Positions 1,868 through 62,097 of a stretch of 64,000 nt of DNA are shown in pieces. Numbering within the stretch: position 1 is the first letter of the stretch; each line of letters begins with the position of its first letter. Under the pieces are notes generated by a model. That model had not been told where the DNA came from, searched no databases, and was given only the letters and a program-made list of their open reading frames with translations. The stretch lies in IMG/VR virus record IMGVR_UViG_3300042308_001616, positions 124,001 to 188,000 of that record. One strand, written 5' to 3'. The translations under genes and the position numbers were made by a program.

Positions 1868-1875
1868 TATATATA
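1868..1875 (+). promoter_or_regulatory. WATATATA box (putative late promoter) upstream of tail sheath
   Basis: TATATATA; the same motif recurs upstream of more than 20 mostly virion or leader-bearing genes. Confidence 0.6.
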
Positions 1876-1903
1876 CCAATAGAAAAAAAACAAAGACAAA
1901 AAC

Positions 1904-4900
1904 ATGGCAATTCAAATTGGAAAATACAAGAGGCCGGGAATATTCCTCGAGGAATACGACAACTCGGTCATCGCCACTCCGATTGTCGAGGGTATAACTA
2001 ACCTTGTTATTGGTGTCTCTAAAAAGGGACCTATTAACACACCGGTAAGGTTGACCACCGTCAGTGACTTAGAGTCCATATTCGGACAACTCGACAGGGG
2101 TCTCGAAAGAAAAGGTTCATACTTCCACAGAACCGTGTCCAAAATGCTCGAGAGCTCACCGGTATTCGCGATGAACTTGCTCTTGACAGATGACACATTA
2201 GACACTATAGAATACAAATCAGTATCTACGTCCTCTGATAAGGCCAATGATATGGAAAGACTCGGTGCATACAGAAGGTTTCACGACACAACTGGTTTCT
2301 GGAAAAGAGATACTGAATCGTTTCTAAACCTAACTAAAACGAACACAGGGTATAGTGATAGAGTTCTTAACTTCACCAACTTATCTGATAGATATGCAAC
2401 GGTGTTTGTTTTCAATTCAAAAGTATCTGGTTTTGACAGAACATTGATTGAGTGGTATGGTTCTATAGAAAAAGTTCCGGCATACGTCAACTCAACAGAT
2501 TGGGCATCAGACTATATGGTGGATGTAGTAATCATTGCGGGAGACTGGTCAGATTATAGAACACTATCAGTAGATCCTAGATGGAGTGCATATTTCAATG
2601 CAAATGGTCTTAGAAAAGAACAAATTAGAAACTTCGCAAACGATAGAAACGTAAGTGCACTTGCGTATTACGAAGGACTTTCTTTGATACCTTACTTTAG
2701 AGATGCCAACGGAAGAAATATCTTCATCGAGACTACAATCAATAGAGATACAGACAAAACAGGAATCTTCTGTGCATTCAATAATGATTTAGTAGAAGCG
2801 GACTTTTATAATGGTAAAATTGATATAATTGGCCAAACTATAGTTGGTAACAATAAAGAATCTATTGAATTCCTTTCTTATCAAGACACAATTACGGAAC
2901 AAGTTGATTTTACAACAACACCACTTGACTTACCAGGAAACGTAACTGCCTTAATTGGCCCTATTCAAGCAGTGGGTGATGCATTTGGAAGTCATGCATT
3001 CGAAAAAAGTAATAATCCTAGAACATCTGGAGTTCTTCAAAGTTATGATAGAACCGCTTATTATGCAGAAGATTTCGTAAGAAATGTATCACTTTCTGCA
3101 AGTGCATCTAGGGTAGATGTTAATACAGTATCCGTAACTTACAAAGTTCACACAGATGGTGGTTATGCTGTTATTGGTGACAACCTTGTAGAATTGGCAG
3201 GACCTATGGCACACACATTATCCATAAGTTCTTTCAATTTTGCTACTAGTTCAACTGCATTAGTATACAAATCTGCATTCGTTCTTGATTCAACAGGTAA
3301 TTTTAAAGTTGTTACAGGTGACGTTCCTAACACTCAACCTACCGTAGAGTCTAGTGATATAGTTCTGGGTCACACATCTTACACCGTTCAATCACAACAA
3401 TTTCAAACAACGGTTACACAAACCAACGTTTATATAGATCCAGAAAACACAGGAGTTACTGCATATAGACACTTAATATTAGGTACAGATTATACGGTTA
3501 ATTTATTACCATCTCAAATACCAGGTTCAAGTCAAACACGAACGGGTGCTATTGAAATAACATTCTTAGGTACAAACAAAACTCCGGATTTATCGGATTA
3601 TGTAACTTATAGAAGGTTTAAAGCATTCAACAGGTTAGTAGATTTATTAGATAGTCCTAATAGAGAAAAAATGACAATGTTAATCGATATTACTTCTATG
3701 AAGAAAGCATCTATGGCTAATATGGAGGTAGTAGATATAGTAACATCTACAACACAGAATAAATCTTTTACCATCGTTACAGGATTAAATCCATCCGAAA
3801 TTACAGATGTTATAAACGGGCGTTTAGTTTTCTATACAAAAGATAACGAATTAATATTAGGTGAAGAATCGATTGTTTCTAAAGATACAACAGTAGATAC
3901 TAACTGGAGAGAAGGAGTTGTTGGTAAATATTCAAATCTATATTCTAAATTCTACGATGGTCAAATATCTACAGGAGACGTCATATACAATAACAGAATA
4001 AAATATGTAGGTACAGAAACATCTGTGGCAACATATTCAGTTTATTTTGTTCCAGGTGAGACATTGTCTGCAGTATCAGGATTCCTAACAGGACCAACTA
4101 CAGATTATGCAGGAAATGACTATATCGTATTGATGGGTGGTGCTGCGGATCCACAATTTCAACTAAACGACATAATAAAAGTAAAAGGTGCAGTTAATAA
4201 CACAGGAAACTTTACAATAGTTTCAGGAAAACTTAACTCTACAACATTTGGTGCAGGTTCTGGTTTCGTTTATCAAGTAAATGAAAATACAACATATGAG
4301 TACGTACCGGTAACTAGTCAAATAAATGATATGAACTCCGGAAGTGAGCACTACCTAAAAATGTACTTAGATGGTGAAAAAATAACTATCAACTTTGTAG
4401 ATGCAGCAGGTGCAACTTCTTCATTACTAAACTGGGACGGTAGTACATCAGGCGCAGGTGTTCAAGCATCAACAAACTTCACTATCAACTCAATGGATAC
4501 AAACTTCAAACAATCTATCGAGATTGAAGTTCCATCTGGTTACACAGAAGTTGATAATAAAATATTAGTAAATGCACAAAGATACCCAGAGGTTATGAAG
4601 GGTGACTTCTTAGAGGCAGAATATGACGAGTCAACACTCGAAATAGGACAAGTTGCTAGAAAGATGACAAGAATACTCGACAAAAAACAATACTCTAAAG
4701 ATGTATCACTTATGGAAATAACATGTGATAGTAAAATCAAAAAAGTATACTCTGGTTCTGCATACCAAACTATTAGATACAAAAAAGTTGAGAATTATAT
4801 AGAAACCTACAAAGCAATATCACTAAAAGGTTTCAGAGTAAGACAAGCTTCACTTCCTGATGGAACAGAAACTAAACAAAACCAAATACTCAACCTTGTT

Positions 4901-5848
4901 GCAAAAGGAACTACATTGTTCAAAGCACTTACAAACAAAGAAGCGATTGATTTCAGATACTTGATTGACTCTTTCGGAAATGGTCTTACAGAGAATTCTA
5001 AACAACAACTTGCAGACATCTGTGGTGATAGACTTGACGCATTTGGATTCTTAAATATGCCATCAATGAGAGCATTCAAAAACTCTAGTTCTCCATCATT
5101 TGTGAACTCGGAAGGTGTTCTTCAAGCAGAATACATTGCAAAAGGAGCAGATCCTGAAAGTGGGCCAGCATTCTACTATACTTTCGCACAAGGAGAAGGA
5201 ACAACATGTGTTGGATACTTCTTACCATATCTTAGTGTGAATGATAACGGAAGACCTATGGATTTTCCACCTGCATCTTTCGTGGCTGCGACATATATGA
5301 GAAAACACATCAGTAACTTAGGTGGATTAACACCTTGGACAATCGCGGCGGGTGTAATAAACGGAAGAATTACAGGAATAAATGGTATAGAAATGGACTT
5401 CACACCAAGTGATATCGAATTTTTGAACCAAGCTCAGATGAACCCTATTGTTTTCAAAAGAAATAGAGGAAACGTTATCGAGACAGAGAACACAGCACAA
5501 ACTCTTTACAAATCTGCACTTTCTTACATACACGTTAGAGAGGTATTGATTGAACTTGAAAGAGAATTATCAAGAATGTTGTTAGACTTCCAATGGCAGT
5601 TCAACACTTCTGAAATCAGATCTGAAATTAAAATGAGGGCTGATATGATTTGTGAAACATTCGTAAGTAGAAACGGTCTATATAACTATTTCAACAAAAT
5701 GGACGAAGAGAACAACACCGCAGAGATTATCGATAATCAAATTGGTGTACTTGACACATACGTAGAACCAATAAAAGGTATGGGAATAATCGTGAATAAC
5801 GTAACCATATTAAGAACTGGTGCTATCGATTCAGGTGGATTCATATAA
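1904..5848 (+). CDS. Contractile tail sheath protein (T4 gp18-like) with large central insertion
   Basis: N-term 'RPGIFLEEYDNS...GVSKKGPINTP'; C-term sheath domain 'PPASFVA...PWTIAAG...LNQAQMNPI...SALSYIHVR...DEENNT.EIIDN...YVEP'. Confidence 0.93.
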   Translation: MAIQIGKYKRPGIFLEEYDNSVIATPIVEGITNLVIGVSKKGPINTPVRLTTVSDLESIFGQLDRGLERKGSYFHRTVSKMLESSPVFAMNLLLTDDTLDTIEYKSVSTSSDKANDMERLGAYRRFHDTTGFWKRDTESFLNLTKTNTGYSDRVLNFTNLSDRYATVFVFNSKVSGFDRTLIEWYGSIEKVPAYVNSTDWASDYMVDVVIIAGDWSDYRTLSVDPRWSAYFNANGLRKEQIRNFANDRNVSALAYYEGLSLIPYFRDANGRNIFIETTINRDTDKTGIFCAFNNDLVEADFYNGKIDIIGQTIVGNNKESIEFLSYQDTITEQVDFTTTPLDLPGNVTALIGPIQAVGDAFGSHAFEKSNNPRTSGVLQSYDRTAYYAEDFVRNVSLSASASRVDVNTVSVTYKVHTDGGYAVIGDNLVELAGPMAHTLSISSFNFATSSTALVYKSAFVLDSTGNFKVVTGDVPNTQPTVESSDIVLGHTSYTVQSQQFQTTVTQTNVYIDPENTGVTAYRHLILGTDYTVNLLPSQIPGSSQTRTGAIEITFLGTNKTPDLSDYVTYRRFKAFNRLVDLLDSPNREKMTMLIDITSMKKASMANMEVVDIVTSTTQNKSFTIVTGLNPSEITDVINGRLVFYTKDNELILGEESIVSKDTTVDTNWREGVVGKYSNLYSKFYDGQISTGDVIYNNRIKYVGTETSVATYSVYFVPGETLSAVSGFLTGPTTDYAGNDYIVLMGGAADPQFQLNDIIKVKGAVNNTGNFTIVSGKLNSTTFGAGSGFVYQVNENTTYEYVPVTSQINDMNSGSEHYLKMYLDGEKITINFVDAAGATSSLLNWDGSTSGAGVQASTNFTINSMDTNFKQSIEIEVPSGYTEVDNKILVNAQRYPEVMKGDFLEAEYDESTLEIGQVARKMTRILDKKQYSKDVSLMEITCDSKIKKVYSGSAYQTIRYKKVENYIETYKAISLKGFRVRQASLPDGTETKQNQILNLVAKGTTLFKALTNKEAIDFRYLIDSFGNGLTENSKQQLADICGDRLDAFGFLNMPSMRAFKNSSSPSFVNSEGVLQAEYIAKGADPESGPAFYYTFAQGEGTTCVGYFLPYLSVNDNGRPMDFPPASFVAATYMRKHISNLGGLTPWTIAAGVINGRITGINGIEMDFTPSDIEFLNQAQMNPIVFKRNRGNVIETENTAQTLYKSALSYIHVREVLIELERELSRMLLDFQWQFNTSEIRSEIKMRADMICETFVSRNGLYNYFNKMDEENNTAEIIDNQIGVLDTYVEPIKGMGIIVNNVTILRTGAIDSGGFI

Positions 5849-6458: not shown

Positions 6459-6466
6459 AATATATA
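6459..6466 (+). promoter_or_regulatory. WATATATA box (putative late promoter)
   Basis: AATATATA 19 nt upstream of ATG 6486. Confidence 0.55.
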
Positions 6467-6485: not shown

Positions 6486-7454
6486 ATGTCTGATAACAAC
6501 ATGAGCGAGGAAGACTACCTCAGAATACATTTGGAGGACCTCGAAAGGAACAAAAGGACACCGGAACAACCGGAACCAACAAATCACATATCAAGTGACA
6601 TACCTTTTAACACAAACACTGGTAACTCAGAAAACACAAAGGTAAGTGACCTTCAATACTTCCATTTTGACATCAAAGAACTACCATGTGGTCAATTCTA
6701 TCCACAAGGAACTGTACTTATGATTAGACCTGCACAGGTTAGGGAAATACAAGCATATTCGATGGTAGATGATAATAACTTCTATGATATAGTAGAGAAA
6801 ATGAATGATATGCTACAATCGTGTGTTAGAGTAAAATATGTAGATGGTAAGATAGGCTCTTTTTTAGATATAAAGGATCAGGATAGATTATTCATTATCT
6901 TCGCAATAAGAGAACTTACATTCCAACAAGGAAACTCACTAAGTGTAAATACTAAATGTGGATCTTGTGGAATAGAGGAAACGGTAGAATTGAAAAGAAG
7001 TAACTTTGCATTCCACGAGATTGACGAAAAACTAGCAAAGTTTTATAACAAAAACGCAGGATGTTACCAATTCAAAACCATCAACGGTAAAACATTTGAA
7101 CTAACACCACCAAACATCGGTTTACAAAAAGCATTTACTGACTACATCATAAAAGAAAACAACGACAAAAGGAGTCCGAATTTGGCATTCCTTAAGATAA
7201 TACCTTTTATGTTAGGTGGAAGATCTAGTATAACATACGAAGGAATAAAGGCAAAACTAAGAGAATTTGAAGAGATAGATGGAACTTCTTTTCAGTTCTT
7301 AAATAGTGCAGTAGGGAAAATGACTTTTGGTATAAAAGAGTTAAGTAAAACGTGTCAGTGTGGTGAGGAGATCCGCACTGAAATGCAATTTCCCAACGGA
7401 GCCTCAGGTATTTTCGTTATTCATGATGCCTTTGAAGCATATATTAAAGAATAA
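6486..7454 (+). CDS. Baseplate hub / tail assembly chaperone (T4 gp26-like)
   Basis: 'ELPCGQFYP...IRPAQVREI...DRLFIIFAIRELT...KCGSCG' pattern, second Cys pair near C-term; lies between sheath and tube. Confidence 0.6.
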   Translation: MSDNNMSEEDYLRIHLEDLERNKRTPEQPEPTNHISSDIPFNTNTGNSENTKVSDLQYFHFDIKELPCGQFYPQGTVLMIRPAQVREIQAYSMVDDNNFYDIVEKMNDMLQSCVRVKYVDGKIGSFLDIKDQDRLFIIFAIRELTFQQGNSLSVNTKCGSCGIEETVELKRSNFAFHEIDEKLAKFYNKNAGCYQFKTINGKTFELTPPNIGLQKAFTDYIIKENNDKRSPNLAFLKIIPFMLGGRSSITYEGIKAKLREFEEIDGTSFQFLNSAVGKMTFGIKELSKTCQCGEEIRTEMQFPNGASGIFVIHDAFEAYIKE

Positions 7455-7750: not shown

Positions 7751-8392
7751 TTAGTATCCACTGACCATAGGTCCAGATATACCAAATCCGTTGTCAATAT
7801 ACTCATCTACGAAGTAGTCGTATAAGAAAGTAGCATCAACGTTATTCACGATATCATTTGAAGCCCAGTCTAGTGCCCACCCTGTAAGTTTAGACATTTG
7901 ACAGTTCATAAATGTAACTCTTCTCAATACAACACCTTTCTTATCGTGTTGGTTAACAATTATAGTTCCAACCATATCACTTTTATAGTGTAAAGTACCA
8001 TTTTGTGAGTTGAATAAAAGGTCATACCATGCCTTAAGAGTCGTCCATGTAGTCATCTGACCCGCATTGTTAACGTTAACCTGGAAAGGTATGGTAATCT
8101 CACCACTGGTTTTACTCGGTGTTGTTTGAAATTGTCTCGTTGAATACTTGAATCTTTGTTCTTTGGCAGCAACCTCGAAAGATGTTAGGTTAGATAAATC
8201 TATCTTAGTCGCATTCTCGAGAAGCAACAATTTGTTTGCTCCTGTATCGTAGGGTGTTCCTGCAAAAATAGTAGGAAGTACAAACGTAATCTCGAATAAG
8301 TTTGTGTAAACAACTTCATCCGTCGTAGTTGGTGAACCTGGTCCACCAGGTGAACCAACATTCGATAATTGGGTATAATGCGGTAATGGCAT
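7751..8392 (-). CDS. Tail tube protein (T4 gp19-like)
   Basis: 'NLFEITF...LKAWYDLLFNSQNG...YKSDMVGTIIVNQHDKKG..LRRVTF.NC...LDWAS...F.YDYF'. Confidence 0.82.
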   Translation of the reverse strand: MPLPHYTQLSNVGSPGGPGSPTTTDEVVYTNLFEITFVLPTIFAGTPYDTGANKLLLLENATKIDLSNLTSFEVAAKEQRFKYSTRQFQTTPSKTSGEITIPFQVNVNNAGQMTTWTTLKAWYDLLFNSQNGTLHYKSDMVGTIIVNQHDKKGVVLRRVTFMNCQMSKLTGWALDWASNDIVNNVDATFLYDYFVDEYIDNGFGISGPMVSGY

Positions 8393-8434: not shown

Positions 8435-8493
8435 TATATATTAAGTATAAAATTTCTTCTGTTTTCCTAGTCTCTTACCTAATTGTATATATT
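8435..8493 (-). promoter_or_regulatory. Tandem TTAATATATA boxes upstream of tail tube
   Basis: Minus-strand AATATATA at 8435-8442 and 8486-8493. Confidence 0.55.
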
Positions 8494-10480: not shown

Positions 10481-10584
10481 AACTAAAAATAATTATTTTT
10501 ATCATAATTATATATTTAGTAATGAAACATAATTATTTCATAAGTGTTGAAAAATCAATAATTTTGACTATGTTGAAAAAAAAA

Positions 10585-14909: not shown

Positions 14910-14938
14910 AATGCCACTCTTAGAGTGGCATTTTTTTT
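14908..14938. terminator. Intrinsic terminator between convergent genes
   Basis: AAATGCCACTCT-t-AGAGTGGCATTTTTTTT. Confidence 0.8.
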
Positions 14939-15605: not shown

Positions 15606-15613
15606 ATAATTCT

Positions 15614-17523: not shown

Positions 17524-17560
17524 TATATATTATTACCGAGATATGCCAATTTTATATATA
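17524..17560. promoter_or_regulatory. Back-to-back divergent WATATATA boxes
   Basis: Minus AATATATA 17524-17531; plus TATATATA 17553-17560. Confidence 0.55.
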
Positions 17561-23377: not shown

Positions 23378-23382
23378 ATAAG

Positions 23383-30021: not shown

Positions 30022-30055
30022 TATATATAAAATAAGACTCACTCTTTAATATATA
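30022..30055. promoter_or_regulatory. Back-to-back divergent WATATATA boxes
   Basis: Minus TATATATA 30022-30029; plus AATATATA 30048-30055. Confidence 0.55.
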
Positions 30056-33129: not shown

Positions 33130-33166
33130 ATCTAAAAGATAATTTTTGGTTATATATTAAAATCTG

Positions 33167-33276: not shown

Positions 33277-34464
33277 ATGAGACAAGAACTTGAAAAGCTT
33301 ATACATGACAAATCACCAGGTGCCCAACCTCTGTTACTCGTAGTCAGAGGATCACATGCATACGGAACAAACGTAGAGACTTCAGATACCGACTACGCAG
33401 GTGTTTTCATACAATCAATCGACGACATACTCGGTAACGGATACAAAGAACAGATTAACGACGATAAAAACGACATTGTCATCTACGAGATAAAAAGGTT
33501 TCTAAACCTATTGGCATCAAACAACCCAACCGTACTGGAACTACTCAACACACCAGAGGACTGCGTTGTGTACAAGCACCCAGTATTCGACGAGGTACTA
33601 AAAAATAGAGAAAAGTTCATCACCAAAATCTGTGCTAAGTCTTTCGGTGGATATGGAAAGATACAAATTCAAAAAGCGAAAGGACAGAATAAAAAACAGA
33701 ACTGGGAAAAAGATAAAGTAACTCGAAAAGATGTTCTTGACTTTGTTTATGTAATTGATGGACCTAAATCTATTCCTTGGAAAAAATGGAATGAAGGTAA
33801 AGGATATGAAGAAAAGTTCTGCGGAGTTGTAAATGTTCCAAATGCCAGGGATGTCTATGCTGTTTATTTTGATAAGATTGCTTATAGCTGCTTCAGCGAA
33901 GCGGTGCCCGACAATCTTAGAGAATATCAAAAAAATATACAAAACGATAAGAACGAACCTATGGGATTCGGGTACAAAGGTTTAGTTAAAACTGGTGAAG
34001 GTGCAAATGTAGCAGAGTCAAATGCTCTTAGATTATCTTCTATTCCAAAAAGCGAAACTCCAATCTGTAACATCGTCTACAACAAAGACGGATATTCTGA
34101 ACATTGTAAAGATTATAAATCTTACGAAGATTGGTTAGTAAATAAAAATGAAGCAAGATGGGTGGATGTACAATCACATGGTCAAAAGATTGATGGTAAG
34201 AATATGATGCACTCAAAACGTCTAATGTCAATGGCACGTGAAATTGCTGAAGGTAAAGGTATCAATGTTAGAAGGGATGATGCCGAGTACCTAATCTCAA
34301 TCAGGAGGGGTGCAATCGACCTACAAACACTAATCGACGAGGTCGAATCAGAGATTGTTGAGATTGACAAGCTTTTTGAGGAGTCAGATTTACCGGATTC
34401 GGTTGATCAAAAATTCATAGATAATCTACTCATCAAAATAAGGAAATCTATATATAACCTTTAG
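33277..34464 (+). CDS. DNA polymerase beta-superfamily nucleotidyltransferase (RlaP/YcgL-like)
   Basis: 'VRGSHAYGTN.ETSDTDYAGVF', 'NNPTVLELL', 'DGKNMMH..RL...IRRG'. Confidence 0.85.
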   Translation: MRQELEKLIHDKSPGAQPLLLVVRGSHAYGTNVETSDTDYAGVFIQSIDDILGNGYKEQINDDKNDIVIYEIKRFLNLLASNNPTVLELLNTPEDCVVYKHPVFDEVLKNREKFITKICAKSFGGYGKIQIQKAKGQNKKQNWEKDKVTRKDVLDFVYVIDGPKSIPWKKWNEGKGYEEKFCGVVNVPNARDVYAVYFDKIAYSCFSEAVPDNLREYQKNIQNDKNEPMGFGYKGLVKTGEGANVAESNALRLSSIPKSETPICNIVYNKDGYSEHCKDYKSYEDWLVNKNEARWVDVQSHGQKIDGKNMMHSKRLMSMAREIAEGKGINVRRDDAEYLISIRRGAIDLQTLIDEVESEIVEIDKLFEESDLPDSVDQKFIDNLLIKIRKSIYNL

Positions 34465-36643: not shown

Positions 36644-36656
36644 AGAGTATATATTA

Positions 36657-38323: not shown

Positions 38324-38366
38324 TATATATAAAATACCGGATGCGACAATTCCAAATTAATATATA
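38324..38366. promoter_or_regulatory. Back-to-back divergent WATATATA boxes
   Basis: Minus TATATATA 38324-38331; plus AATATATA 38359-38366, 4 nt before ATG. Confidence 0.55.
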
Positions 38367-39273: not shown

Positions 39274-39326
39274 AAAGGCTTTTATAAATGAATATATAGT
39301 TATATAAAAAAAAATAAAATTTAAAC

Positions 39327-40310: not shown

Positions 40311-40334
40311 GTCTGTCGTTGTTTGTTTGTTTTA

Positions 40335-40342
40335 CAAAAATA
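40335..40342 (-). promoter_or_regulatory. Bacteroidota-type -7 promoter box
   Basis: Minus-strand TATTTTTG(TAAAA). Confidence 0.45.
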
Positions 40343-40390
40343 ATCATTTTATTCATAGTTACAGAATTTTTTCTGAAAAAATATTAATAA

Positions 40391-40902: not shown

Positions 40903-40975
40903 CGCCAAGTTTCAATAACACACATTACCAAAAATAAATTTCAGTTTATTATATATACTAAAAAATAAAATCATT

Positions 40976-44659: not shown

Positions 44660-44693
44660 ACTATTTTGGAATAGAGATATGAATATATACTCT

Positions 44694-49209: not shown

Positions 49210-49224
49210 AGACTATATATACAC

Positions 49225-49262
49225 AAAACCGCCACTTGTCGGTGACAGGTAGCGGTTGTTTT
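49225..49262 (-). terminator. Intrinsic terminator
   Basis: Minus strand CCGCTACCTGTC-acc-GACAAGTGGCGG-TTTTG. Confidence 0.6.
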
Positions 49263-50452: not shown

Positions 50453-50509
50453 ACACTATATATAAAGTTTTAACTGTAAACAAATCAATTTTGTGTAAAT
50501 ATATTCTAT

Positions 50510-53045: not shown

Positions 53046-53076
53046 AAAAGCACAGATTATTCTGTGCTTTTCTATT
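53041..53076. terminator. Bidirectional intrinsic terminator
   Basis: AATAGAAAAGCACAGA-ttat-TCTGTGCTTTTCTATT. Confidence 0.85.
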
Positions 53077-53885: not shown

Positions 53886-53890
53886 CCAGG

Positions 53891-53912
53891 TATATATTAT
53901 TTCCGATATATA
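53891..53912. promoter_or_regulatory. Back-to-back divergent ATATATA boxes, each 5 nt from an ATG
   Basis: Minus AATATATA 53891-53898; plus GATATATA 53905-53912. Confidence 0.55.
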
Positions 53913-53917
53913 CTTTT

Positions 53918-54139
53918 ATGAAGAATGACGAAAAATACCCACTCTACCTGGCCTGGCTAGAAGACCAACTGAAGGCAGGAAAGCTTAACCGAGGAACTTG
54001 GTCACTGAGGAAGATGAGTCGACAAGCATTCGACGAATTCAAACAAAGACTCGATGATGGTCAGTTTGAGAACAAAGTAGTACAGGTAAATCGTGATAGT
54101 AAGATAGATGACCTTTTCGACGGTTTCGACTTTGATTGA
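53918..54139 (+). CDS. Small protein ending RDSKIDDLFDGFDFD
   Basis: Shared motif. Confidence 0.65.
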   Translation: MKNDEKYPLYLAWLEDQLKAGKLNRGTWSLRKMSRQAFDEFKQRLDDGQFENKVVQVNRDSKIDDLFDGFDFD

Positions 54140-54481: not shown

Positions 54482-54497
54482 AGTAATATATAACAAC

Positions 54498-55034
54498 ATG
54501 AAATGGATAAAACTATACGAGGAGTTCACCAACGACAGTATGCAGGATTTGTTAACCGATGCTCTCGAAGAGGAAATAAAAGCGGTCATAAAAAAAAATG
54601 GTCACTTCTCAGCAAAAGACTATTACGCACTCATGAAGTCTAGGAAATTAGACGATAGGATGGCAGATGAAATATTCCACGACTTAGTCGGTAGAGGAAT
54701 CGGATTCAGTGATGGTGAAGAAATAATTATCGAAGACGAACAATTCATATTCCACTTTGAAAAAATACAAAGACAGGGAGAAGAGACATATTATTGGGGA
54801 ACTCTTTATTGTCCAGACTACACTTATGGTGGTGAAGAAGATGAACAAGAAACTATACCGGGTGAATTATATGGTAGATTTGTCGCATTTGAAGACGGAC
54901 CGACAATGTTAGATTTCGAAGGACCAAATGATCTTACCGTATATGATTTCTGTGAAGGACTCGAACATGAGTTAGACAACTTTGCAGAATACGCTGTTGA
55001 TGAAATAAATAAAAAAATAAATAATAATGGATAA
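54498..55034 (+). CDS. Acidic protein with leader MKWIKLYEEF
   Basis: AATATATA 5 nt upstream. Confidence 0.7.
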   Translation: MKWIKLYEEFTNDSMQDLLTDALEEEIKAVIKKNGHFSAKDYYALMKSRKLDDRMADEIFHDLVGRGIGFSDGEEIIIEDEQFIFHFEKIQRQGEETYYWGTLYCPDYTYGGEEDEQETIPGELYGRFVAFEDGPTMLDFEGPNDLTVYDFCEGLEHELDNFAEYAVDEINKKINNNG

Positions 55035-55647: not shown

Positions 55648-55673
55648 AAAGAGAGGCTTTGGCCTCTCTTTTT
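55646..55673. terminator. Bidirectional intrinsic terminator
   Basis: AAAAAGAGAGGC-tttg-GCCTCTCTTTTT. Confidence 0.85.
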
Positions 55674-56020
55674 TATTTATCAATTGGTTCATCAACACTT
55701 TCACTATCTTCTACAGAATTATTATTTTGATCATCATCATTATATCTAAGATGATCACATTTCTCTTTTTGTATTTGTCTTATTATGTACCCCGCTATAA
55801 AGAATTGTATACTAGCCCACATTCCAAACTCGACCATTGTCATCGTATTTATTTTAGCCAGAAGGTAGAATATCATACCCCATTCTGCTATAACAAACCC
55901 TATTCCAGACTCTATTCTCTTTTTTGAGAAATAGGTCTTTCTCGCTGTGTATATGTTTACCATCTCTGTGATAAACCACTTTATGTTGGTCCATCCAAAG
56001 AACCATTTACCCTTTCCCAT
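55673..56020 (-). CDS. Two-TM membrane protein, holin candidate
   Basis: 'SKKRIESGIGFVIA' then two TM helices, charged tail; late box upstream. Confidence 0.5.
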   Translation of the reverse strand: MGKGKWFFGWTNIKWFITEMVNIYTARKTYFSKKRIESGIGFVIAEWGMIFYLLAKINTMTMVEFGMWASIQFFIAGYIIRQIQKEKCDHLRYNDDDQNNNSVEDSESVDEPIDK

Positions 56021-56053
56021 AAAACTTTTGTTTTTATATATTAAAAGGGAAAA

Positions 56054-56761
56054 CTAAAAACCTTCATCATCCACATCCGGATCGTGAAATGGTGAGTAGA
56101 AAATATTATCTTCTGATGGTGTTACCGGAAGTCCGCACTCGGCCAAAAGAGGTATAAATACTTTGTCAGTCTGACCAAGAAGTAGACCTAAGTAGAAAGA
56201 AAATGGCCAACAAATCTCATAGTTGATGTAAACGGTTCTATAATTTTTTCTTTCTAACGAAATATTGTTATTTTTCATTAGATGATATGCCTCGTTTCTG
56301 TAACGGAAGACGTATTCATCATTGTTATAGTAGACAATCCACTTCCACTTTGCTTTATCATCTGGATTTGCCTCAATATTTTCATCTTCGTATGGATCAA
56401 CAACCTCCTTTTTTGTAAGCCCTTTTAACTTTTCAACTATGAATTTAGAACAAGCATTCACAATGTCAGTTCCTCTGTAAAGTGTTATCGAGTAACGGTT
56501 CTTCCACATCTTCGTAATTGAAATATTATAACCGAGACTTTCGAACATATCCCTGTAGTTTTCTATGTGATGATCAAACTTCCAGTAGAACCCCTTCACA
56601 ACGTCGTTCTCGTTCGGAAACTCAATCTCGTAGACTTTTAGTATATCACTTCCTTTGAAGAAGTCAATCTCTTTGAAACCGTCGGCACCTGTCTCATCAA
56701 CAAAGTGTGAAAGTATCTGTTCAATCTCGTTGAACTCCTCAAATAACTTTATGTACCTCAT
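56054..56761 (-). CDS. Hypothetical protein with leader MRYIKLFEEF (paralog family)
   Basis: Shares 'LGYN' and 'V.[IV]NY...W.F' with the neighbour. Confidence 0.7.
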   Translation of the reverse strand: MRYIKLFEEFNEIEQILSHFVDETGADGFKEIDFFKGSDILKVYEIEFPNENDVVKGFYWKFDHHIENYRDMFESLGYNISITKMWKNRYSITLYRGTDIVNACSKFIVEKLKGLTKKEVVDPYEDENIEANPDDKAKWKWIVYYNNDEYVFRYRNEAYHLMKNNNISLERKNYRTVYINYEICWPFSFYLGLLLGQTDKVFIPLLAECGLPVTPSEDNIFYSPFHDPDVDDEGF

Positions 56762-57375
56762 TAGTAGATTGAAACCCTTTTTATCTCTCTTCCGGTAACA
56801 TAACTAGCCCAATCACAGAGTATACTATTTATAGTCTTGTCATAAAATTCACTAGCAATCATCTCGTCCAAGAACGCCCAAGTTTGATGGTAGTTGACGA
56901 ACGCCTCGTCTACACACTGTGGTGCCTCCACTGGATCGTAGACCTTCAGTATCTGCTTACCGTCCTTCATCCACTCGACGAATGAGCTCTTTCTGACCCA
57001 CGGAGTACCCGGTTCCACACCCAAGCGCTTTCCCATATCACGTCCGTATACTTCCTTTAACCATTCAGTTGCTGCCTGTAACATAGTGCCTTTGTGAAAA
57101 ACAGTGTAGAATATTGTAGGCATCGTAGTGGATCCTACCATCCTTTTGTCAGTCCTGGTGAATTTTAGATTATAGCCTAAGTACTCTGCAAGTTCACTAT
57201 ACTCTAAACTCAACTTTTGAATCTCGTCTTTGTTATCCTCACTACCTTTAAGTCTGTACGCAATCATCGCATCAGACTTAATGACCTCCAGCATTTCCAT
57301 CTCAAAATCCTCGCAGATTCTGACCATAATCTGTACGATAGGATTGAACTCTTCGAACATTCTCAAATACCTCAT
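56761..57375 (-). CDS. Hypothetical protein with leader MRYLRMFEEF (paralog family)
   Basis: Start revised from 57525; TATATATA 4 nt upstream. Confidence 0.7.
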   Translation of the reverse strand: MRYLRMFEEFNPIVQIMVRICEDFEMEMLEVIKSDAMIAYRLKGSEDNKDEIQKLSLEYSELAEYLGYNLKFTRTDKRMVGSTTMPTIFYTVFHKGTMLQAATEWLKEVYGRDMGKRLGVEPGTPWVRKSSFVEWMKDGKQILKVYDPVEAPQCVDEAFVNYHQTWAFLDEMIASEFYDKTINSILCDWASYVTGREIKRVSIY

Positions 57376-57397
57376 AGGGTATATATAAAAAAAGGAA

Positions 57398-58594
57398 TTA
57401 CATATTGTCGAAGAACCTGAACTTACTATCGTAGTCCTTTTTATCGTCACCTTTCTTACGACGACCGTACTTAGGAAGCCATCGGATGTCGAATTCATCT
57501 TTACTAAAGAAATTATCCAGAACAAGTTTCTTATATGAGTCTGGTACGAGCTGTGCCAATTTGTTCATGTCCTTCACCTTACTTATTCTGTGCATAAGTT
57601 GTTCAGGATTGGTAGATTTCTTTTTCGCAACTATATCTTCAAAAAGTTTCCTCCATAAAAACACAGGGTAACCCTGTCTCATTTTCTCTTCGGTTTTTCG
57701 GTAACCGGCTTCATCATTGTCGAAGAAGTACCTGAGATCCAATCCAGATCCTTCTAACAAACGGAAGTCAGTATTTACACCAACGAGACCAATTGAGTTA
57801 GGGAAGTAAAGTGAATCGATATAACCCTCGAAAACCGTAACGGTATCACCAAAGTTTATGTTGAGTATGTTAAAGTAGTATGATAATTTGTTATAAATAA
57901 CTATCTCACCAGCGTCTACATCGTGTTCTGTATCCTTTCCAATCATAATCCACTCAAGTAGATTTTCATAGTTGTATATTTTGAACATCCTACGTTTACC
58001 CTCTTTCAAATTACGTATCTGCATACCGAGTACTTTATCATCTCTTCTGTTGAGCATCACTATTATCCACTCATGCTCATCCTCGTTCTTCCAGTATTTT
58101 GCTTGGTATATATTTTTGTGAAATTCAGGACCAATTCCACGTCCTATTAGATATTTGTAAACACCGCTATTAGATTGTATTGGTTTGAAATCTGATATTG
58201 GTGTCAGATTTTCAGAGAATATACGTTCGAGTTCCGATAGTTCAATAAGATTTTCGAACCTAGCATCAGCCATACTCGCTTCAGCATCTTTATATGTAAC
58301 TACCGAGTCGAGATATTCTATCATCTCTAACTTTTTATCAGGATCGATGACTTCATTGTGTTTCTTACAAAGTCGATCAAGACCCATACTAGATCCACAA
58401 TTGAAACATACATATCTAAGACTTTTTAGATAAAGATTTCCCCTTTTCTTATGTTCGTTATTATGTGAATCACCACAACATGGTGCACAGAAGTTTAGAC
58501 GATCAACGTAGTCCCTAACCTTTCTCCTAGCAGGAGATGCAAACTCTTTATCGAGAATCTTTTGTATAAGCCCTTTTACATACTCCTTGTCCAT
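57398..58594 (-). CDS. DNA primase (T4 gp61-like)
   Basis: Zn ribbon 'NFCAPCCGDS...KRG...VCFNCG'; TOPRIM 'VFEGYIDS', 'FFDND', 'KDMN'. Confidence 0.9.
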   Translation of the reverse strand: MDKEYVKGLIQKILDKEFASPARRKVRDYVDRLNFCAPCCGDSHNNEHKKRGNLYLKSLRYVCFNCGSSMGLDRLCKKHNEVIDPDKKLEMIEYLDSVVTYKDAEASMADARFENLIELSELERIFSENLTPISDFKPIQSNSGVYKYLIGRGIGPEFHKNIYQAKYWKNEDEHEWIIVMLNRRDDKVLGMQIRNLKEGKRRMFKIYNYENLLEWIMIGKDTEHDVDAGEIVIYNKLSYYFNILNINFGDTVTVFEGYIDSLYFPNSIGLVGVNTDFRLLEGSGLDLRYFFDNDEAGYRKTEEKMRQGYPVFLWRKLFEDIVAKKKSTNPEQLMHRISKVKDMNKLAQLVPDSYKKLVLDNFFSKDEFDIRWLPKYGRRKKGDDKKDYDSKFRFFDNM

Positions 58595-58624
58595 ACAGAG
58601 TATATTGTATCAAACTGTCTTTGT

Positions 58625-60517
58625 TTACACCATTCTCAGGAGTATCCATCTTTTGTAGAGTTCCTCACCCGGCTCCGGCATCTTAAGCAACCTCGTCATA
58701 TCCAGACTGCCGAACACCTGACCGATCCTAGGATGGTTCTCGTAGCAAGCAGCGGCGTACCTGGCTTTCCCAACCATCACTTTCGCATCCTCTTCACTCA
58801 GATTCAACCTCGACCTCAGGTCAGGCTTTGTCTTCTCGTCACCGTATATCCTCGAGGCTACGTTACTCACCGCACCCTTGCTACGCCCGTCGAACCCACC
58901 GCCATACAGATAAACTATAAAGGCGGGCACAAGATCCGTCAGGCCGGTGGTCACGAACTCTTTGTTGTCCATTCCTATATCACAGTATGTCGCGTATTCG
59001 TAGTGAATACCCTTGAAAAGATCTTTCACAAAGTCTTCAATCGAGACCGAATATCCTTTCCACTCAACCAGCATCGACTCGGTGTCCTCCCTGAGCATCA
59101 GCTTGTCGAACTTGCCGCTGTCACTTCTGGCAACGCCGTTCTGCACGTATTCCCTCTTCAGCTTGCTCTCGACCTCCTCGCGGTCGAAGGTGAACTCCTT
59201 ATCGATCGGGTCGTAGGTGTAGTCCTTGGAGTAGTACTCGCCGTCGACCTTCACGTAGAGCGCGACCTCATCCTTGTGACACCAGTCCGTGTTGCCCTCC
59301 TCGTCGACAATCACCTCGATGGCATCGTCCTCCGGAATCCAGTCGCTCATCATCTCGGACTTGACGGTGTCCTCCTCGAGGTATGTGTTGCCGTCGAACT
59401 CGCAGTACCTTGTGTTTGCCCTGTCGGAGACGTAAACGTCCCTGTATTCGAGCCAGGTCGCGTGGTCGGCCGTCACGTAGTCGTCTATGTCATCGCAGTA
59501 GAATGCGTCGTCGACCGGAATCCAGTCGTCGAGGTATTCCGAACGCCTGAACTCCTCCTCGAGCGACGGCCCTTCGCCGTGTGTCGACTGCAGGTACAGA
59601 ACGTTATCGGTGTAGGTGGGAATTGACTTGGTAAGCGTGCCTTCCTCAGTGTCGTAGTACTTGAAGGTGTCCATGTAAGGGTACTTCCCGTAGTCCTTAG
59701 CCTTCACCTCGACCGTAGCGTTTGCCGGTGCGACCGGTGTCAGACCGTAGCTGTAGTCTATCTTGTTGGTCTTTCCCCAGTCGTAGAACTTACCGATGTT
59801 GGCGTTCGTGTCGACGCAGTAGACGCGGTCCATGTAAGTCTTCCCGTCGTCAAGCGTCCAGATTAGCGCTCGACCCATCGTCTTACCTTCTTTGTCGAGC
59901 ATGACCAGTAGCTTCACAACATCCGGGTTCTCGGTGTAAATACCGAAGAAGCCGGCACAATCGGGCTTCCTCATGCAGGATCCGTGCAGCGAGTCGTTGC
60001 CTGAGTAGTCCTTTTTGTCGACGAAGCTGCTTTCCAGGTACCTCCTCACTATCTCTACACCCTGTACGACCTCGAAGGTGTGAGAGTCTCCTTTCTGTGC
60101 TAGGTCGTACTCCACCCTGTAGGCGTTTACAAATAGTTCGAGCTCTGCACCAGGTACCTCTTTGTCAACGTTTTTCATCACCATCTGTGCAAATTTACCA
60201 ATCGCATACTCTGGTGTTCTTCCTTCACTCCAATATTTGTTTGTCTTATCAGGTCTTTCACCATCGGGGTGAACTTTTAAGTATCTGTTGGCTTGTACAA
60301 ATGACACTTTGTCGTTTTTATCAGTTATGTCTATAAGTGAATAGGGGTATTTCGACTGACCACCTGTTTCCTGTAGTATTAATACACCAGCCACTCTTTC
60401 AGCAGTTCCGTTATATTTTTCATAAATAAATTTCAGTATGTTCCTGAATTGGTCGGAATAATAGAGTTGCATACCTTTTGTAGAACTCTCGATAATAAAG
60501 TCTTCGTATCTTAACAT
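58625..60517 (-). CDS. Conserved phage protein ('SCM...GRALIW...YMDRVY...YPYMDTF' family) with leader MLRYEDFIIES and acidic repeats
   Basis: Motifs as given; GC-rich body; late box 4 nt upstream. Confidence 0.75.
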   Translation of the reverse strand: MLRYEDFIIESSTKGMQLYYSDQFRNILKFIYEKYNGTAERVAGVLILQETGGQSKYPYSLIDITDKNDKVSFVQANRYLKVHPDGERPDKTNKYWSEGRTPEYAIGKFAQMVMKNVDKEVPGAELELFVNAYRVEYDLAQKGDSHTFEVVQGVEIVRRYLESSFVDKKDYSGNDSLHGSCMRKPDCAGFFGIYTENPDVVKLLVMLDKEGKTMGRALIWTLDDGKTYMDRVYCVDTNANIGKFYDWGKTNKIDYSYGLTPVAPANATVEVKAKDYGKYPYMDTFKYYDTEEGTLTKSIPTYTDNVLYLQSTHGEGPSLEEEFRRSEYLDDWIPVDDAFYCDDIDDYVTADHATWLEYRDVYVSDRANTRYCEFDGNTYLEEDTVKSEMMSDWIPEDDAIEVIVDEEGNTDWCHKDEVALYVKVDGEYYSKDYTYDPIDKEFTFDREEVESKLKREYVQNGVARSDSGKFDKLMLREDTESMLVEWKGYSVSIEDFVKDLFKGIHYEYATYCDIGMDNKEFVTTGLTDLVPAFIVYLYGGGFDGRSKGAVSNVASRIYGDEKTKPDLRSRLNLSEEDAKVMVGKARYAAACYENHPRIGQVFGSLDMTRLLKMPEPGEELYKRWILLRMV

Positions 60518-60551
60518 AGTGTATATATTACAGGAATGATTTTAAAAAAAA

Positions 60552-60576
60552 GAAAAGGCGCTAATCGCGCCTTTTC
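60552..60576. terminator. Intrinsic terminator
   Basis: GAAAAGGCGC-taatc-GCGCCTTTTC, T-run on minus strand. Confidence 0.75.
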
Positions 60577-61711: not shown

Positions 61712-61712
61712 A

Positions 61713-62021
61713 TTACTTTCTTTTTTTGTTAATGAATGATTGAAAAGACTCTAATTGACCCATTTCTTCTTCTTCCTCTTCTTCATTTTGTCCGAAATCA
61801 TCCTCATCCTCATCTTCTTCCTCTTGTCCGAAATCCTCTTCTTCCTCTTGTCCGAATTCGCCAAAACCTTGAACATCATCCGATTCACCTTCTTGACTTT
61901 CTTCTAATTCGATTGTGAATTCTTCTACAACCTCTTCGTCTTTTGTAGCAGAAACAGATATATTTCCTTCAGACTCTTCTATCACGATTAGGTACCCGTT
62001 TATTTCAACTGTTGTTTTCAT
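61713..62021 (-). CDS. Highly acidic small protein ending in LESFQSFIN motif
   Basis: Glu/Asp runs with 'FGQEEE' repeats; late box upstream. Confidence 0.65.
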   Translation of the reverse strand: MKTTVEINGYLIVIEESEGNISVSATKDEEVVEEFTIELEESQEGESDDVQGFGEFGQEEEEDFGQEEEDEDEDDFGQNEEEEEEEMGQLESFQSFINKKRK

Positions 62022-62097
62022 GTGTATTTTCTATTTTTTGGATATATATTAAAACTTTTAAACCGCTTTGTTATAAAAACTATAAAAAAACTAAAGA

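What the first reader, a model, noticed from the sequence alone, without database searches (positions are those of the whole stretch)
1868..62050. Recurrent WATATATA box, often 4-5 nt before the ATG: a novel late promoter making (near-)leaderless mRNAs
Seen: a correctly oriented (A/T)ATATATA box at 1868, 6459, 8435, 8486, 10509, 17524, 17553, 30022, 30048, 33151, 36648, 38324, 38359, 39291, 40950, 44682, 49214, 50457, 53891, 53905 (G variant), 54485, 56035, 57380, 60522 and 62043. It precedes the sheath, tube, baseplate, tape measure and most leader-bearing genes. In ten cases only 4-5 nt separate box and ATG (e.g. AATATATA-ctct-ATG at 36648 and 44682; -ccct-ATG 57380; -cact-ATG 60522). Four divergent gene pairs have back-to-back boxes. 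Known: T4 late promoters are a lone TATAAATA box read by gp55, with initiation a few nt downstream. Inference: this is a variant late promoter, and the fixed spacing implies transcripts starting at or next to AUG. Box + ATG + leader would be a ~45-bp portable 'express late and package' module.
Basis: partly seen in the sequence, partly recalled or inferred. Interest (0 to 1): 0.78.

Follow-up and report, generated by a model that had tools for sequence, protein, structure and literature searches.

The report
Conserved TATATATA phage promoter box
An 8-base (A/T)ATATATA box heads about 25 transcription units in this piece of a huge Bacteroidota-type phage. It is a one-base variant of the phage T4 late promoter and is conserved across the largest known phage genomes. 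In about a third of cases it lies only 4-5 bases before the start codon, so those mRNAs should have almost no leader.

Summary
WATATATA occurs at 31 sites in the window. 23 lie in the 2.4 kb of intergenic DNA, against 2.5 expected from composition-matched shuffles. None lies between convergent genes, and all strand-informative copies point at a gene start. The box is purged from coding DNA on both strands.

The window belongs to the 'Mahaphage' clade of 460-735 kb phages. In those complete genomes ATATATA is the top upstream motif. The box is the invariant block upstream of orthologous sheath, tube and hub genes.

Box-to-ATG spacing is bimodal: 4-5 nt or 18-30 nt, and almost never 10-16. In the complete relative LR745206.1 the counts are 95 and about 100 genes. 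In the long-spacer class the fifth base after the box is A in 76% of cases, which is the likely start site.

LR745206.1 and all clade members encode a 121-aa gp55-like minimal sigma factor. Virion genes carry the box; most replication genes do not. A separate host-type TAnnTTTG class exists.

The best reading is a T4-style, -35-less late promoter (TATATATA against T4 TATAAATA) that makes leaderless or near-leaderless mRNAs for about a third of its genes. Timing, start sites and the sigma gene of this particular genome are not shown. It is a new variant of a known kind.

The parts
1868..1875 (+). TATATATA box, 28 nt before the ATG of the tail sheath gene (1904-5848)
   Evidence: A box is conserved upstream of the sheath orthologue in 4 of 4 genomes
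6459..6466 (+). AATATATA box, 19 nt before the baseplate-hub-like gene 6486-7454
   Evidence: Conserved in 4 of 4 genomes; it is the invariant block of alignment A2
8435..8442 (-). AATATATA box, 42 nt before the tail tube gene 7751-8392. A second copy lies at 8486-8493, 93 nt before the ATG
   Evidence: Both copies point at the tube gene and not at the divergent SbcD-like gene. Tube orthologues have a box in 4 of 4 genomes
10509..10516 (-). AATATATA box, 28 nt before gene 9704-10480
17524..17531 (-). AATATATA box, 21 nt before 17038-17502. It heads a minus-strand run of leader-bearing genes that extends to 15186
17553..17560 (+). TATATATA box, 21 nt before the 1931-aa gene 17582-23377. It is back-to-back with the box at 17524
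   Evidence: The orthologue in LR756502.1 has a box at the same 21-nt spacing
30022..30029 (.). Palindromic TATATATA in a 56-nt divergent spacer, 23 nt before 25421-29998 (-) and 25 nt before 30055-30525 (+). A further AATATATA at 30048-30055 overlaps the ATG and its role is unclear
33151..33158 (-). AATATATA box, 21 nt before 32116-33129
   Evidence: The orthologue in LR745206.1 has a box 19 nt before its ATG
34449..34456 (+). TATATATA inside the last codons of 33277-34464, 41 nt before 34498-35124
36648..36655 (-). AATATATA + 4 nt + ATG of 35960-36643 (N-terminus MRYIKMFEYF). The box fills a 13-nt spacer after the upstream stop codon
38324..38331 (-). TATATATA box, 24 nt before 37568-38299
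38359..38366 (+). AATATATA + 4 nt + ATG of 38371-39273
39291..39298 (+). AATATATA box, 28 nt before 39327-39941 (leader-bearing)
40950..40957 (+). TATATATA box, 18 nt before 40976-41548. It heads the unit that contains the endolysin-like gene 41578-42189
44682..44689 (+). AATATATA + 4 nt + ATG at 44694. This is the likely true start of the 548-aa gene that ends at 46340
49214..49221 (-). TATATATA + 4 nt + ATG of the 955-aa gene 46342-49209. It lies directly after a terminator-like hairpin (49229-49248)
50457..50464 (-). Palindromic TATATATA + 4 nt + ATG of 49883-50452. It is also 45 nt before the divergent gene 50510-51289
53891..53898 (-). AATATATA + 5 nt + ATG of 53076-53885, in a divergent spacer of only 32 nt
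53905..53912 (+). GATATATA variant + 5 nt + ATG of 53918-54139. It is 6 nt from the opposing box
54485..54492 (+). AATATATA + 5 nt + ATG of 54498-55034 (N-terminus MKWIKLYEEF), in a 16-nt spacer
56035..56042 (-). AATATATA box, 14 nt before 55673-56020. This is the only spacing between the two modes
57380..57387 (-). TATATATA + 4 nt + ATG at 57375 of gene 56761-57375 (N-terminus MRYLRMFEEF)
60522..60529 (-). AATATATA + 4 nt + ATG of the 630-aa gene 58625-60517, 22 nt after a terminator hairpin (60552-60576). The primase gene 57398-58594 follows with no box of its own
62043..62050 (-). AATATATA box, 21 nt before 61713-62021
40311..40390 (-). Contrast class: a TATTTTTG element (host-type TAnnTTTG) 24 nt before 39993-40310. 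A similar TATATTTG lies 18 nt before 40391-40876
   Evidence: The same class is the top motif among box-less genes of LR745206.1

Best explanation
WATATATA, usually preceded by T, is the sole recognition element of a phage-specific, -35-less promoter class. The model is that host core RNA polymerase reads it together with a phage-encoded minimal sigma factor of the T4 gp55 family, and that it drives mainly virion, lysis and putative packaged-protein genes, that is, late genes.

Transcription is inferred to start at an A about 5 nt after the box, sometimes 6 nt. This is one base closer than, or equal to, the T4 geometry.

Two gene architectures follow:
- A short leader of about 14-25 nt (box-to-ATG spacing 18-30 nt), translated through the A-rich, Shine-Dalgarno-less initiation region typical of Bacteroidota.
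- Box + 4-5 nt + ATG, where the A of the start codon is the start site or lies next to it. This gives leaderless or 1-nt-leader mRNAs.

Shown here: the motif, its statistics, its conservation, the spacing modes, the sigma gene in relatives and the split between virion and replication genes.
Inferred: that the sigma reads this box, the timing, the exact start site and leaderless translation.
For: - **Signal at the DNA level.** 23 intergenic sites against 2.5 expected. Orientation is 29:4 toward genes. The box is absent from convergent spacers in the window. It is purged from coding DNA in both orientations: in LR745206.1 TATATATA is seen 9 times against 122 expected; observed/expected is 0.43 for sense AATATATA and 0.31 for antisense. 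Control AT 8-mers give 0.7-1.25 and T4's TATAAATA gives 1.25.
- **Conservation.** ATATATA is the top upstream 7-mer in LR745206.1, LR756502.1, LR756504.1, LR756501.1 and LR756500.1 (there in the 8-mers ATATATAA and GATATATA). The box is the invariant block upstream of sheath and hub orthologues at 42-71% protein identity.
- **No -35 element.** No conserved upstream position apart from T at -1. Sigma70-type two-hexamer sites are not enriched, 65 against 66.8.
- **Unit boundaries.** Terminator hairpins lie directly upstream of the boxes at 49214 and 60522. A 32-nt divergent spacer holds two boxes, each 5 nt from its ATG.
- **Spacing in LR745206.1.** d=4: 60; d=5: 35; d=10-16: 3 in total; second mode at 18-27. 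The same shape is seen in the window and three relatives.
- **Start-site signature.** The fifth base after the box is A in 76% of 139 long-spacer cases. In the d=4 class the base before ATG is T in 77% and never G, which fits a pyrimidine(-1)/A(+1) start.
- **Sigma factor.** LR745206.1 positions 189151-189516 encode a 121-aa protein. It matches my gp55 HMM at E=3e-6 among 3158 ORFs, PHROG_234 'late sigma transcription factor' at E=1.9e-7 and the gp55 family by hhalign at 94% probability. Homologues occur in all six complete Mahaphage genomes, in 15 Lak phages, and in Xanthomonas phages where they are annotated as late sigma factor. 272 IMG/VR contigs also hold one.
- **Function split in LR745206.1.** Head completion, neck, large terminase, sheath, tube and hub genes have the box (6 of 6). 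SbcD, DNA polymerase, primase, SSB and nucleotidyltransferase genes do not; a helicase gene does (1 of 6). Fisher one-sided p = 0.008.
- **T4 description in the literature.** An 8-bp TATA box about one helical turn upstream of the start, no -35, A in place of T at -13 in 9 of 50 sites, and late transcripts of either polarity (PMC2988020). Bacteroidota jumbo phages (Lak, PTm1) lack an RNA polymerase and encode minimal sigma factors (PMC7824862).
Against: - There are no transcript data, so the start site and timing are inferred.
- No sigma gene lies in the window. I could not show one on the window's own contig.
- No gp33 homologue was detected in LR745206.1 with a narrow T4-like HMM; the best E-value was 0.64.
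- The sigma is only 121 aa. Nothing in it aligns to the C-terminal third of T4 gp55, so clamp coupling may differ.
- Box and sigma are linked only by co-occurrence in the clade.
- Some non-structural genes sit in box-headed units (primase in the window, a helicase in the relative).
- About half of the 4-5 nt class in LR745206.1 share a paralogous N-terminus. Part of the fixed spacing could therefore be inherited by duplication and not selected independently.
Confidence: 0.6

Rival explanations
1. The box is a promoter, but something other than the gp55-like sigma reads it. Candidates are host holoenzyme (housekeeping or alternative sigma using it as an AT-rich -10) or another phage-encoded factor or polymerase. 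Timing need not then be late.
For: The sigma-box link is only co-occurrence. No gp33 was detected. TATATA resembles a generic -10 hexamer. Huge phages encode several transcription proteins (PMC7162821).
Against: Bacteroidota housekeeping promoters use TAnnTTTG (my knowledge). That element forms a separate class here: TATATTTG is the top motif of box-less genes and occurs upstream of 39993 and 40391. Sigma70-type two-hexamer sites are not enriched. Group 2 jumbo phages are reported to lack their own RNA polymerase (PMC7824862). Virion genes have the box and most replication genes do not.
Confidence: 0.17
2. The box acts in RNA, not DNA. It would be an AU-rich processing site or a ribosome-loading or translation-enhancer element placed before start codons in a host phylum that does not use Shine-Dalgarno pairing.
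For: The box lies upstream of start codons, sometimes in spacers of 13-16 nt right after a stop codon with no terminator. The hosts lack Shine-Dalgarno sequences and rely on A/U-rich initiation regions (PMC6028130).
Against: - The antisense orientation is avoided in coding DNA as strongly as the sense one (observed/expected 0.31 against 0.43), and the palindromic form most of all (0.07). An RNA signal would be avoided only in sense.
- The distance to ATG is bimodal and reaches 93 nt, which does not fit a fixed ribosome-site distance.
- Most tightly packed operon-internal genes lack the box.
- Short divergent spacers (32-79 nt) must hold promoters, and the boxes are their recurrent element.
Confidence: 0.06
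3. The box is a late promoter, but the 4-5 nt class is not leaderless. Those genes would be translated mainly from longer read-through transcripts, or initiation would occur upstream of or within the box. The fixed spacing would then reflect duplication of a 'box + leader-peptide' gene cassette.
For: About half of the 4-5 nt genes share the MKYLKxFEEF-type N-terminus and look like an expanded paralogous family. Several lie inside co-directional gene runs with no terminator before them (36648, 54485).
Against: - The other half of the class has unrelated N-termini.
- Spacings of 10-16 nt are almost absent genome-wide. That is expected if leaders must be either about 0 nt or long enough to load a ribosome.
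- The A-peak at the same offset in the long-spacer class and T(-1)/no G before ATG both point to initiation at that A.
- Two such genes follow terminator hairpins, and two face each other across a 32-nt spacer.
Confidence: 0.15
4. Chance or compositional artefact of AT-rich intergenic DNA.
For: Intergenic DNA is 22% GC, and alternating TA is a common low-complexity pattern.
Against: Dinucleotide-matched shuffles of the intergenic segments give 2.5 +/- 1.7 against 23 observed. The two box forms are the most frequent AT-only 8-mers in intergenic DNA. The orientation bias, the absence from convergent spacers, the orthologous conservation and the coding avoidance all argue against chance.
Confidence: 0.01

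Closest known systems
Bacteriophage T4 late promoters (TATAAATA) read by gp55, with gp33 and the gp45 sliding clamp
   Same: Both are 8 bp, A/T only, with T or A at the first position and no -35 element. Both are used on either strand, lie about one helical turn from the inferred start and head virion genes. A gp55-family sigma is encoded by the clade (PMC2988020).
   Different: - The consensus differs at the fifth base (TATATATA against TATAAATA). T4's own consensus is neither enriched near starts nor avoided in coding DNA in LR745206.1.
- The sigma is 121 aa against 185 aa and lacks the C-terminal third.
- gp33 was not detected and clamp dependence is untested.
- The host is Bacteroidota-type.
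- To my knowledge T4 late mRNAs have Shine-Dalgarno leaders, whereas here about a third of the boxes abut the start codon.
Leaderless-gene architecture of Actinobacteria and Deinococcus (GeneMarkS-2 'group C'): a -10 box at a fixed short distance from the start codon
   Same: A promoter element at a fixed short distance from ATG, together with a second class of leadered genes, is the accepted sequence signature of leaderless transcription (PMC6028130). The same two-mode pattern is seen here.
   Different: Here the pattern is in a phage of a phylum classed as 'group B' (non-Shine-Dalgarno ribosome sites; not assigned to the leaderless group). The box is an 8-mer read by a phage-type sigma, and the spacer is 4-5 nt, not 6-8 nt.
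Bacteroidota housekeeping (sigma A) promoters, -7 element TAnnTTTG
   Same: Both are AT-rich single downstream elements close to the start site, in the same host phylum.
   Different: The box lacks the TTTG part. TAnnTTTG elements form a separate class upstream of other genes. In Lak-C1 they appear as GTGTATCTTTG.
Poxvirus late promoters (TAAATG), where initiation occurs within a motif that overlaps the start codon (from memory, not checked here)
   Same: A late-gene promoter core is fused to the ATG, giving mRNAs with essentially no templated leader.
   Different: That is a eukaryotic virus with its own polymerase, and its poly(A) heads are made by slippage. There is no homology.

Membership tests
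T4-type (gp55-dependent) late promoter | 8-bp A/T-only box with consensus TATAAATA | tested here: not met
   The consensus is WATATATA, identical to T4's at 7 of 8 positions. TATAAATA itself shows no start-proximal enrichment (5 of 303 copies at 4-5 nt) and no coding avoidance (ratio 1.25) in LR745206.1. This makes it a variant, not the same motif.
T4-type (gp55-dependent) late promoter | No conserved -35 element | tested here: met
   Position frequency tables of about 100 instances show only T at -1 and a terminator-derived G/T-run upstream. Two-hexamer sigma70 sites are not enriched.
T4-type (gp55-dependent) late promoter | Box centred about 10 bp upstream of the transcription start | not testable with these tools
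   No transcript data are available. The indirect evidence is an A-peak 5 nt after the box (76%, n=139) and T(-1)A(+1) in the 4-nt class.
T4-type (gp55-dependent) late promoter | The phage encodes a gp55-family sigma factor | tested here: inconclusive
   Met for relatives: LR745206.1 189151-189516 and homologues in all complete clade genomes and Lak phages. Not found in the 64-kb window and not shown on its 249-kb contig.
T4-type (gp55-dependent) late promoter | gp33 co-activator and gp45 sliding-clamp dependence | tested here: inconclusive
   A gp33 HMM built from T4-like sequences finds nothing in LR745206.1; the best E-value is 0.64. The literature reports gp33 orthologues in this phage group (PMC7824862). 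The clamp was not tested. The sigma lacks the region that corresponds to T4 gp55's C-terminal third.
T4-type (gp55-dependent) late promoter | Heads late (virion, lysis) genes and not early replication genes | tested here: met
   In the window the sheath, hub and tube genes and the endolysin-like unit have the box; the SbcD and nucleotidyltransferase genes do not. In LR745206.1 the split is 6 of 6 virion genes against 1 of 6 replication genes. Timing itself is inferred.
Leaderless mRNA genes | Promoter element at a fixed short distance from an AUG start, forming a mode separate from leadered genes | tested here: met
   Ten cases in the window. In LR745206.1, 95 cases at 4-5 nt against 3 at 10-16 nt. 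The same modes appear in three further genomes.
Leaderless mRNA genes | Primary 5' end at or within a few nt of the start codon, and translation of that transcript | not testable with these tools
   This needs 5'-end mapping and translation assays.
Bacteroidota sigma A promoter | -7 element TAnnTTTG | tested here: not met
   The box has no TTTG. TAnnTTTG occurs as a separate class.

The most novel reading that the evidence does not exclude
A whole clade of the largest known phages (460-735 kb, Bacteroidota hosts) would express roughly a hundred genes per genome as truly leaderless mRNAs from a gp55-type late promoter fused to the start codon. About half of these genes would begin with a T4 capsid-targeting-like peptide (MKYLKxFEEF). 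Box + ATG + leader would then be a compact cassette that has been multiplied to send many proteins into the virion at the right time. This would be large-scale leaderless translation in a phylum not known for it, possibly helped by the translation factors these phages encode.
Probability: 0.4. Interest if true: 0.8.

Novelty: new variant of a known kind. Interest (0 to 1): 0.62.

Why it matters
No promoter has been described for the Mahaphage/Lak group. None of these phages is cultured, and their genomes are deposited without annotation.

- A simple, highly specific 8-mer that marks unit starts gives a direct way to partition these 0.5-0.7 Mb genomes into early (TAnnTTTG) and late (WATATATA) regulons. 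It also helps fix start codons and pick out candidate virion-packaged proteins.
- The 121-aa sigma with its 8-bp site is a minimal, testable sigma-promoter pair for Bacteroidota, which could be useful as an orthogonal expression part.
- If the 4-5 nt class is truly leaderless, it shows that Bacteroidota ribosomes translate leaderless mRNAs efficiently. It would also link promoter, start codon and packaging signal in one module of about 45 bp.

Tried and rejected
- **Near-identity search.** A search of 20 kb of the window against GenBank phages found nothing. Relatives were found only at protein level.
- **Sigma factor in the window.** PHROGs scans of 64 window proteins (the 70 gene calls minus the shortest) found none. 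A weak gp55-HMM hit to the 75-aa ORF 35124-35351 (E=0.58) was not backed by PHROGs or Pfam and was dropped.
- **tblastn of T4 gp55 against phages.** It returned only T4-like and cyanophage hits in the rows shown and was uninformative for this clade.
- **Sigma gene on the window's own contig.** I tried to place it on IMGVR_UViG_3300042308_001616. The contig is not among the 80 loci kept of 272 and not among 23 exact-pattern hits. Walking upstream returned the same stored block. This is inconclusive, not negative.
- **gp33 search.** No hit.
- **phmmer of the sigma against PDB sequences.** It did not reach T4 gp55. Pairwise BLASTP (E=2e-4) and hhalign (94%) did.
- **Tape-measure assignment.** Pfam and PHROGs give nothing for the large proteins.
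- **tRNA and Rfam scans of the window.** Both were empty.
- **Rejected readings.** Host sigma70-like -35/-10 promoters, host TAnnTTTG identity, an RNA-level signal and chance.

Full report
**What the window is**

The 64-kb window is 35% GC and 95% coding. It has A-rich, Shine-Dalgarno-less sequence before start codons. It encodes a 1314-aa tail sheath, a tail tube, a baseplate-hub-like protein, an SbcD-like nuclease, a DNA polymerase piece, a primase and many unknown proteins.

The sheath is 57-60% identical to those of LR745206.1 (635 kb) and LR756502.1 (642 kb). It is more distant from those of LR756504.1, LR756501.1 (735 kb), LR756500.1, the Lak megaphages and Tenacibaculum phage PTm1. These are the 'Mahaphage' clade, predicted to infect Bacteroidetes (PMC7162821). 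The window lies on IMG/VR contig IMGVR_UViG_3300042308_001616, which is 248,751 bp.

Yes. Every listed box is present.
- 23 of the 31 distinct sites lie fully within the 2,432 nt of intergenic DNA. Dinucleotide-preserving shuffles of those same AT-rich segments give 2.5 +/- 1.7, with a maximum of 10 in 1000.
- Convergent spacers, which hold terminator hairpins, have none. Divergent spacers have 14.6 per kb.
- In co-directional spacers the asymmetric form AATATATA points with the genes 7:0 in the window, and 29:4 over four genomes.
- ATATATA is the most enriched upstream 7-mer, and the two box forms are the most frequent AT-only 8-mers in intergenic DNA.
- Within genes the box is counter-selected: 4 sites against 17.0 +/- 4.5 in codon shuffles.
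- In the complete relative the palindromic form occurs 9 times in coding DNA against 122 expected. For AATATATA observed/expected is 0.43 in sense and 0.31 in antisense. Ten other AT-rich 8-mers range from 0.7 to 1.25, and T4's TATAAATA is at 1.25.

Avoidance in both orientations indicates a signal read on DNA, not on RNA.

**Conservation**

ATATATA is the top upstream 7-mer in 44-kb samples of LR745206.1, LR756502.1, LR756504.1, LR756501.1 and LR756500.1; in the last it is embedded in the 8-mers ATATATAA and GATATATA.

Orthologues of the sheath, hub-like and tube genes carry a box in four of four genomes. The 1931-aa gene and gene 32116 carry one in both genomes that have them. Spacings are similar in each case. 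One 4-nt-class gene (58625) has an orthologue with box + 5 nt + ATG. In alignments of the sheath and hub upstream regions the box is the longest invariant block, while the flanks have drifted.

The motif does not extend unchanged to the whole clade. The PTm1 sample is dominated by ATACATA. The Lak-C1 sample, read with code 15, is dominated by ATAAATAT and by a host-type GTGTATCTTTG.

**Anatomy**

Around the box only a T immediately upstream is conserved. G-rich then T-rich sequence 8-14 nt upstream comes from terminator hairpins that often abut the box. Examples are at 49229-49248 and 60552-60576. Sigma70-type two-hexamer sites are at the chance level, 65 against 66.8.

Box-to-ATG spacing has two modes. 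In the window, ten genes have 4-5 nt and most others have 18-30 nt. Across the whole 635-kb relative the histogram is 60 at 4 nt, 35 at 5 nt, three in total from 10 to 16 nt, and a second mode at 18-27 nt.

In the long-spacer class the fifth base after the box is A in 76% of 139 cases, against about 45-64% at neighbouring positions. In the 4-nt class that same position is the A of ATG, and the base before it is T in 77% and never G. A pyrimidine followed by A at a fixed offset from a -10-like element is what a transcription start looks like.

T4 late promoters place their 8-bp box about one helical turn upstream of the start (PMC2988020); in T4 numbering (box at -13 to -6, from memory) that leaves a 5-nt gap. 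So a start 5-6 nt after the box matches T4 geometry to within one base. The near-absence of 10-16 nt spacings is expected if an mRNA must have either no leader or one long enough to load a ribosome. A promoter box at a fixed short distance from the start codon is the accepted sequence signature of leaderless genes (PMC6028130).

A 32-nt divergent spacer (53886-53917) holds two opposed boxes, each 5 nt from its ATG. That leaves no room for conventional leaders if the promoters are inside the spacer.

**Who reads it?**

The window has no sigma gene. I fetched LR745206.1 completely and searched its 3,158 open frames with an HMM built from 120 gp55 homologues. One frame, 189151-189516 (121 aa), scores E=3e-6. 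PHROGs assigns it to 'late sigma transcription factor' at E=1.9e-7. Pfam Sigma70_r2 is below threshold. BLASTP to T4 gp55 gives 26% identity over 111 residues at E=2e-4. hhalign gives 94% probability over residues 2-96, and the family's conserved Y-x-N-N-K, N-F-(D/N)-E and A-Y-x-T motifs are matched.

Homologues are found in all six complete Mahaphage genomes (47-93% identity), in all 15 Lak genomes, and in Xanthomonas jumbo phages where they are annotated as late sigma factor. 272 IMG/VR contigs also hold one.

This agrees with Iyer et al., who place Lak and PTm1 in a jumbo-phage group that lacks its own RNA polymerase but encodes minimal sigma factors and gp33 (PMC7824862). I did not detect gp33 with a narrow HMM. 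The sigma has nothing matching the C-terminal third of T4 gp55.

**Is it 'late'?**

In the window the sheath, hub-like and tube genes and the unit containing an endolysin-like gene are box-headed. The SbcD-like and nucleotidyltransferase genes are not.

In LR745206.1 the head completion, neck, large terminase, sheath, tube and hub genes all have the box. The SbcD, DNA polymerase, primase, SSB and nucleotidyltransferase genes do not, and one helicase does. This gives a Fisher one-sided p of 0.008.

Among 243 box-less genes with a real upstream gap, the top motif is TATATTTG(TA), the Bacteroidota TAnnTTTG type. In the window it appears before 39993 and 40391. So there are at least two promoter classes: a host-type class that is presumably early, and the box.

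The split is not absolute. The window's primase probably rides on the transcript from the box at 60522.

**Link to the N-terminal 'leader'**

Six of the ten 4-5 nt genes in the window clearly begin with M-[KR]-Y-[IL]-K-x-[FY]-E-x-F-like peptides, and two more do so partly. In LR745206.1 the position-by-position consensus of the 103 genes at 4-6 nt is M-K-Y-L/I-K-x-F/Y-E-E-F. A strict pattern is matched by 16% of them, against 3% of box-less genes.

The peptide resembles the T4 capsid targeting sequence (from memory, not tested). This fits co-expression with head assembly. It also means that part of the fixed spacing may be inherited within an expanded gene family, although many of the class have unrelated N-termini.

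**Verdict**

The finding is a real, strongly selected, clade-wide promoter element. The best mechanism is a T4-style late promoter whose consensus differs from T4's at one base and which a gp55-family minimal sigma reads. Its start site is so close to the box that about a third of its genes should yield leaderless or 1-nt-leader mRNAs.

It is a new variant of a known kind. The scale of the leaderless architecture in a Bacteroidota phage is the unexpected part. Timing, start sites, the sigma-box pairing and leaderless translation remain inferences that need transcript mapping and in vitro transcription.

Noticed in passing
window genes starting at 1282, 15605(-), 16445(-), 17029(-), 30512, 36643(-), 39327, 40976, 44694, 49873(-), 50452(-), 53885(-), 54498, 56761(-), 57375(-), 60517(-), 61711(-): About 20 of 70 genes begin with an M-[KR]-Y-[IL]-K-x-[FY]-E-x-F-like peptide that resembles the T4 capsid-targeting sequence. 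In LR745206.1 this is the consensus N-terminus of genes whose ATG lies 4-6 nt after a box.
   Followed up: partly
window 40311-40390 and 40877-40975; LR745206.1 genome-wide: A second promoter class, TATATTTG/TATTTTTG (Bacteroidota TAnnTTTG type), lies 18-24 nt before genes 39993(-) and 40391(-). It is the top motif among 243 box-less genes of LR745206.1 (38 genes).
   Followed up: partly
window 58001-60000: This segment is 48% GC against about 35% elsewhere. It covers the 630-aa leader-bearing gene 58625-60517, which has no family match.
   Followed up: no
window 23378-23529 (- strand): A 152-nt GC-rich non-coding stretch lies downstream of gene 23530-24177. It folds better than shuffles (z = -2.8) and ends in a terminator hairpin. 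It has no tRNA or Rfam match.
   Followed up: partly
window 51615-53045: The DNA polymerase gene matches only the C-terminal half of the PHROG_262 profile (positions 490-842 of 856). The polymerase may therefore be split or its N-terminal part may be encoded elsewhere.
   Followed up: no
window 14920-16445 (- strand): Neighbouring genes 15186-15605 and 15642-16445 have nearly identical 5' ends (MRHLKTYKIFE and MKHLKTYKIFE). The start of 14920-15189 is repeated just upstream of 15186, which suggests local duplications.
   Followed up: no
L007 (Lak-C1) and L008 (PTm1): More distant relatives have different candidate boxes. Lak-C1 has ATAAATAT plus a host-type GTGTATCTTTG. PTm1 has ATACATA, for example before its sheath gene. 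The box appears to drift with sigma divergence, which is 41% and 36% identity respectively.
   Followed up: partly
L012:42151-42516 and L023-L102: The gp55-like sigma is unusually conserved. It is at least 88% identical in the best 80 of 272 IMG/VR contigs, and 93% identical between LR745206.1 and LR756502.1.
   Followed up: partly
window 30048-30055: An AATATATA copy overlaps the annotated ATG of 30055-30525. Either it is non-functional or the gene starts at the in-frame ATG at 30067.
   Followed up: no
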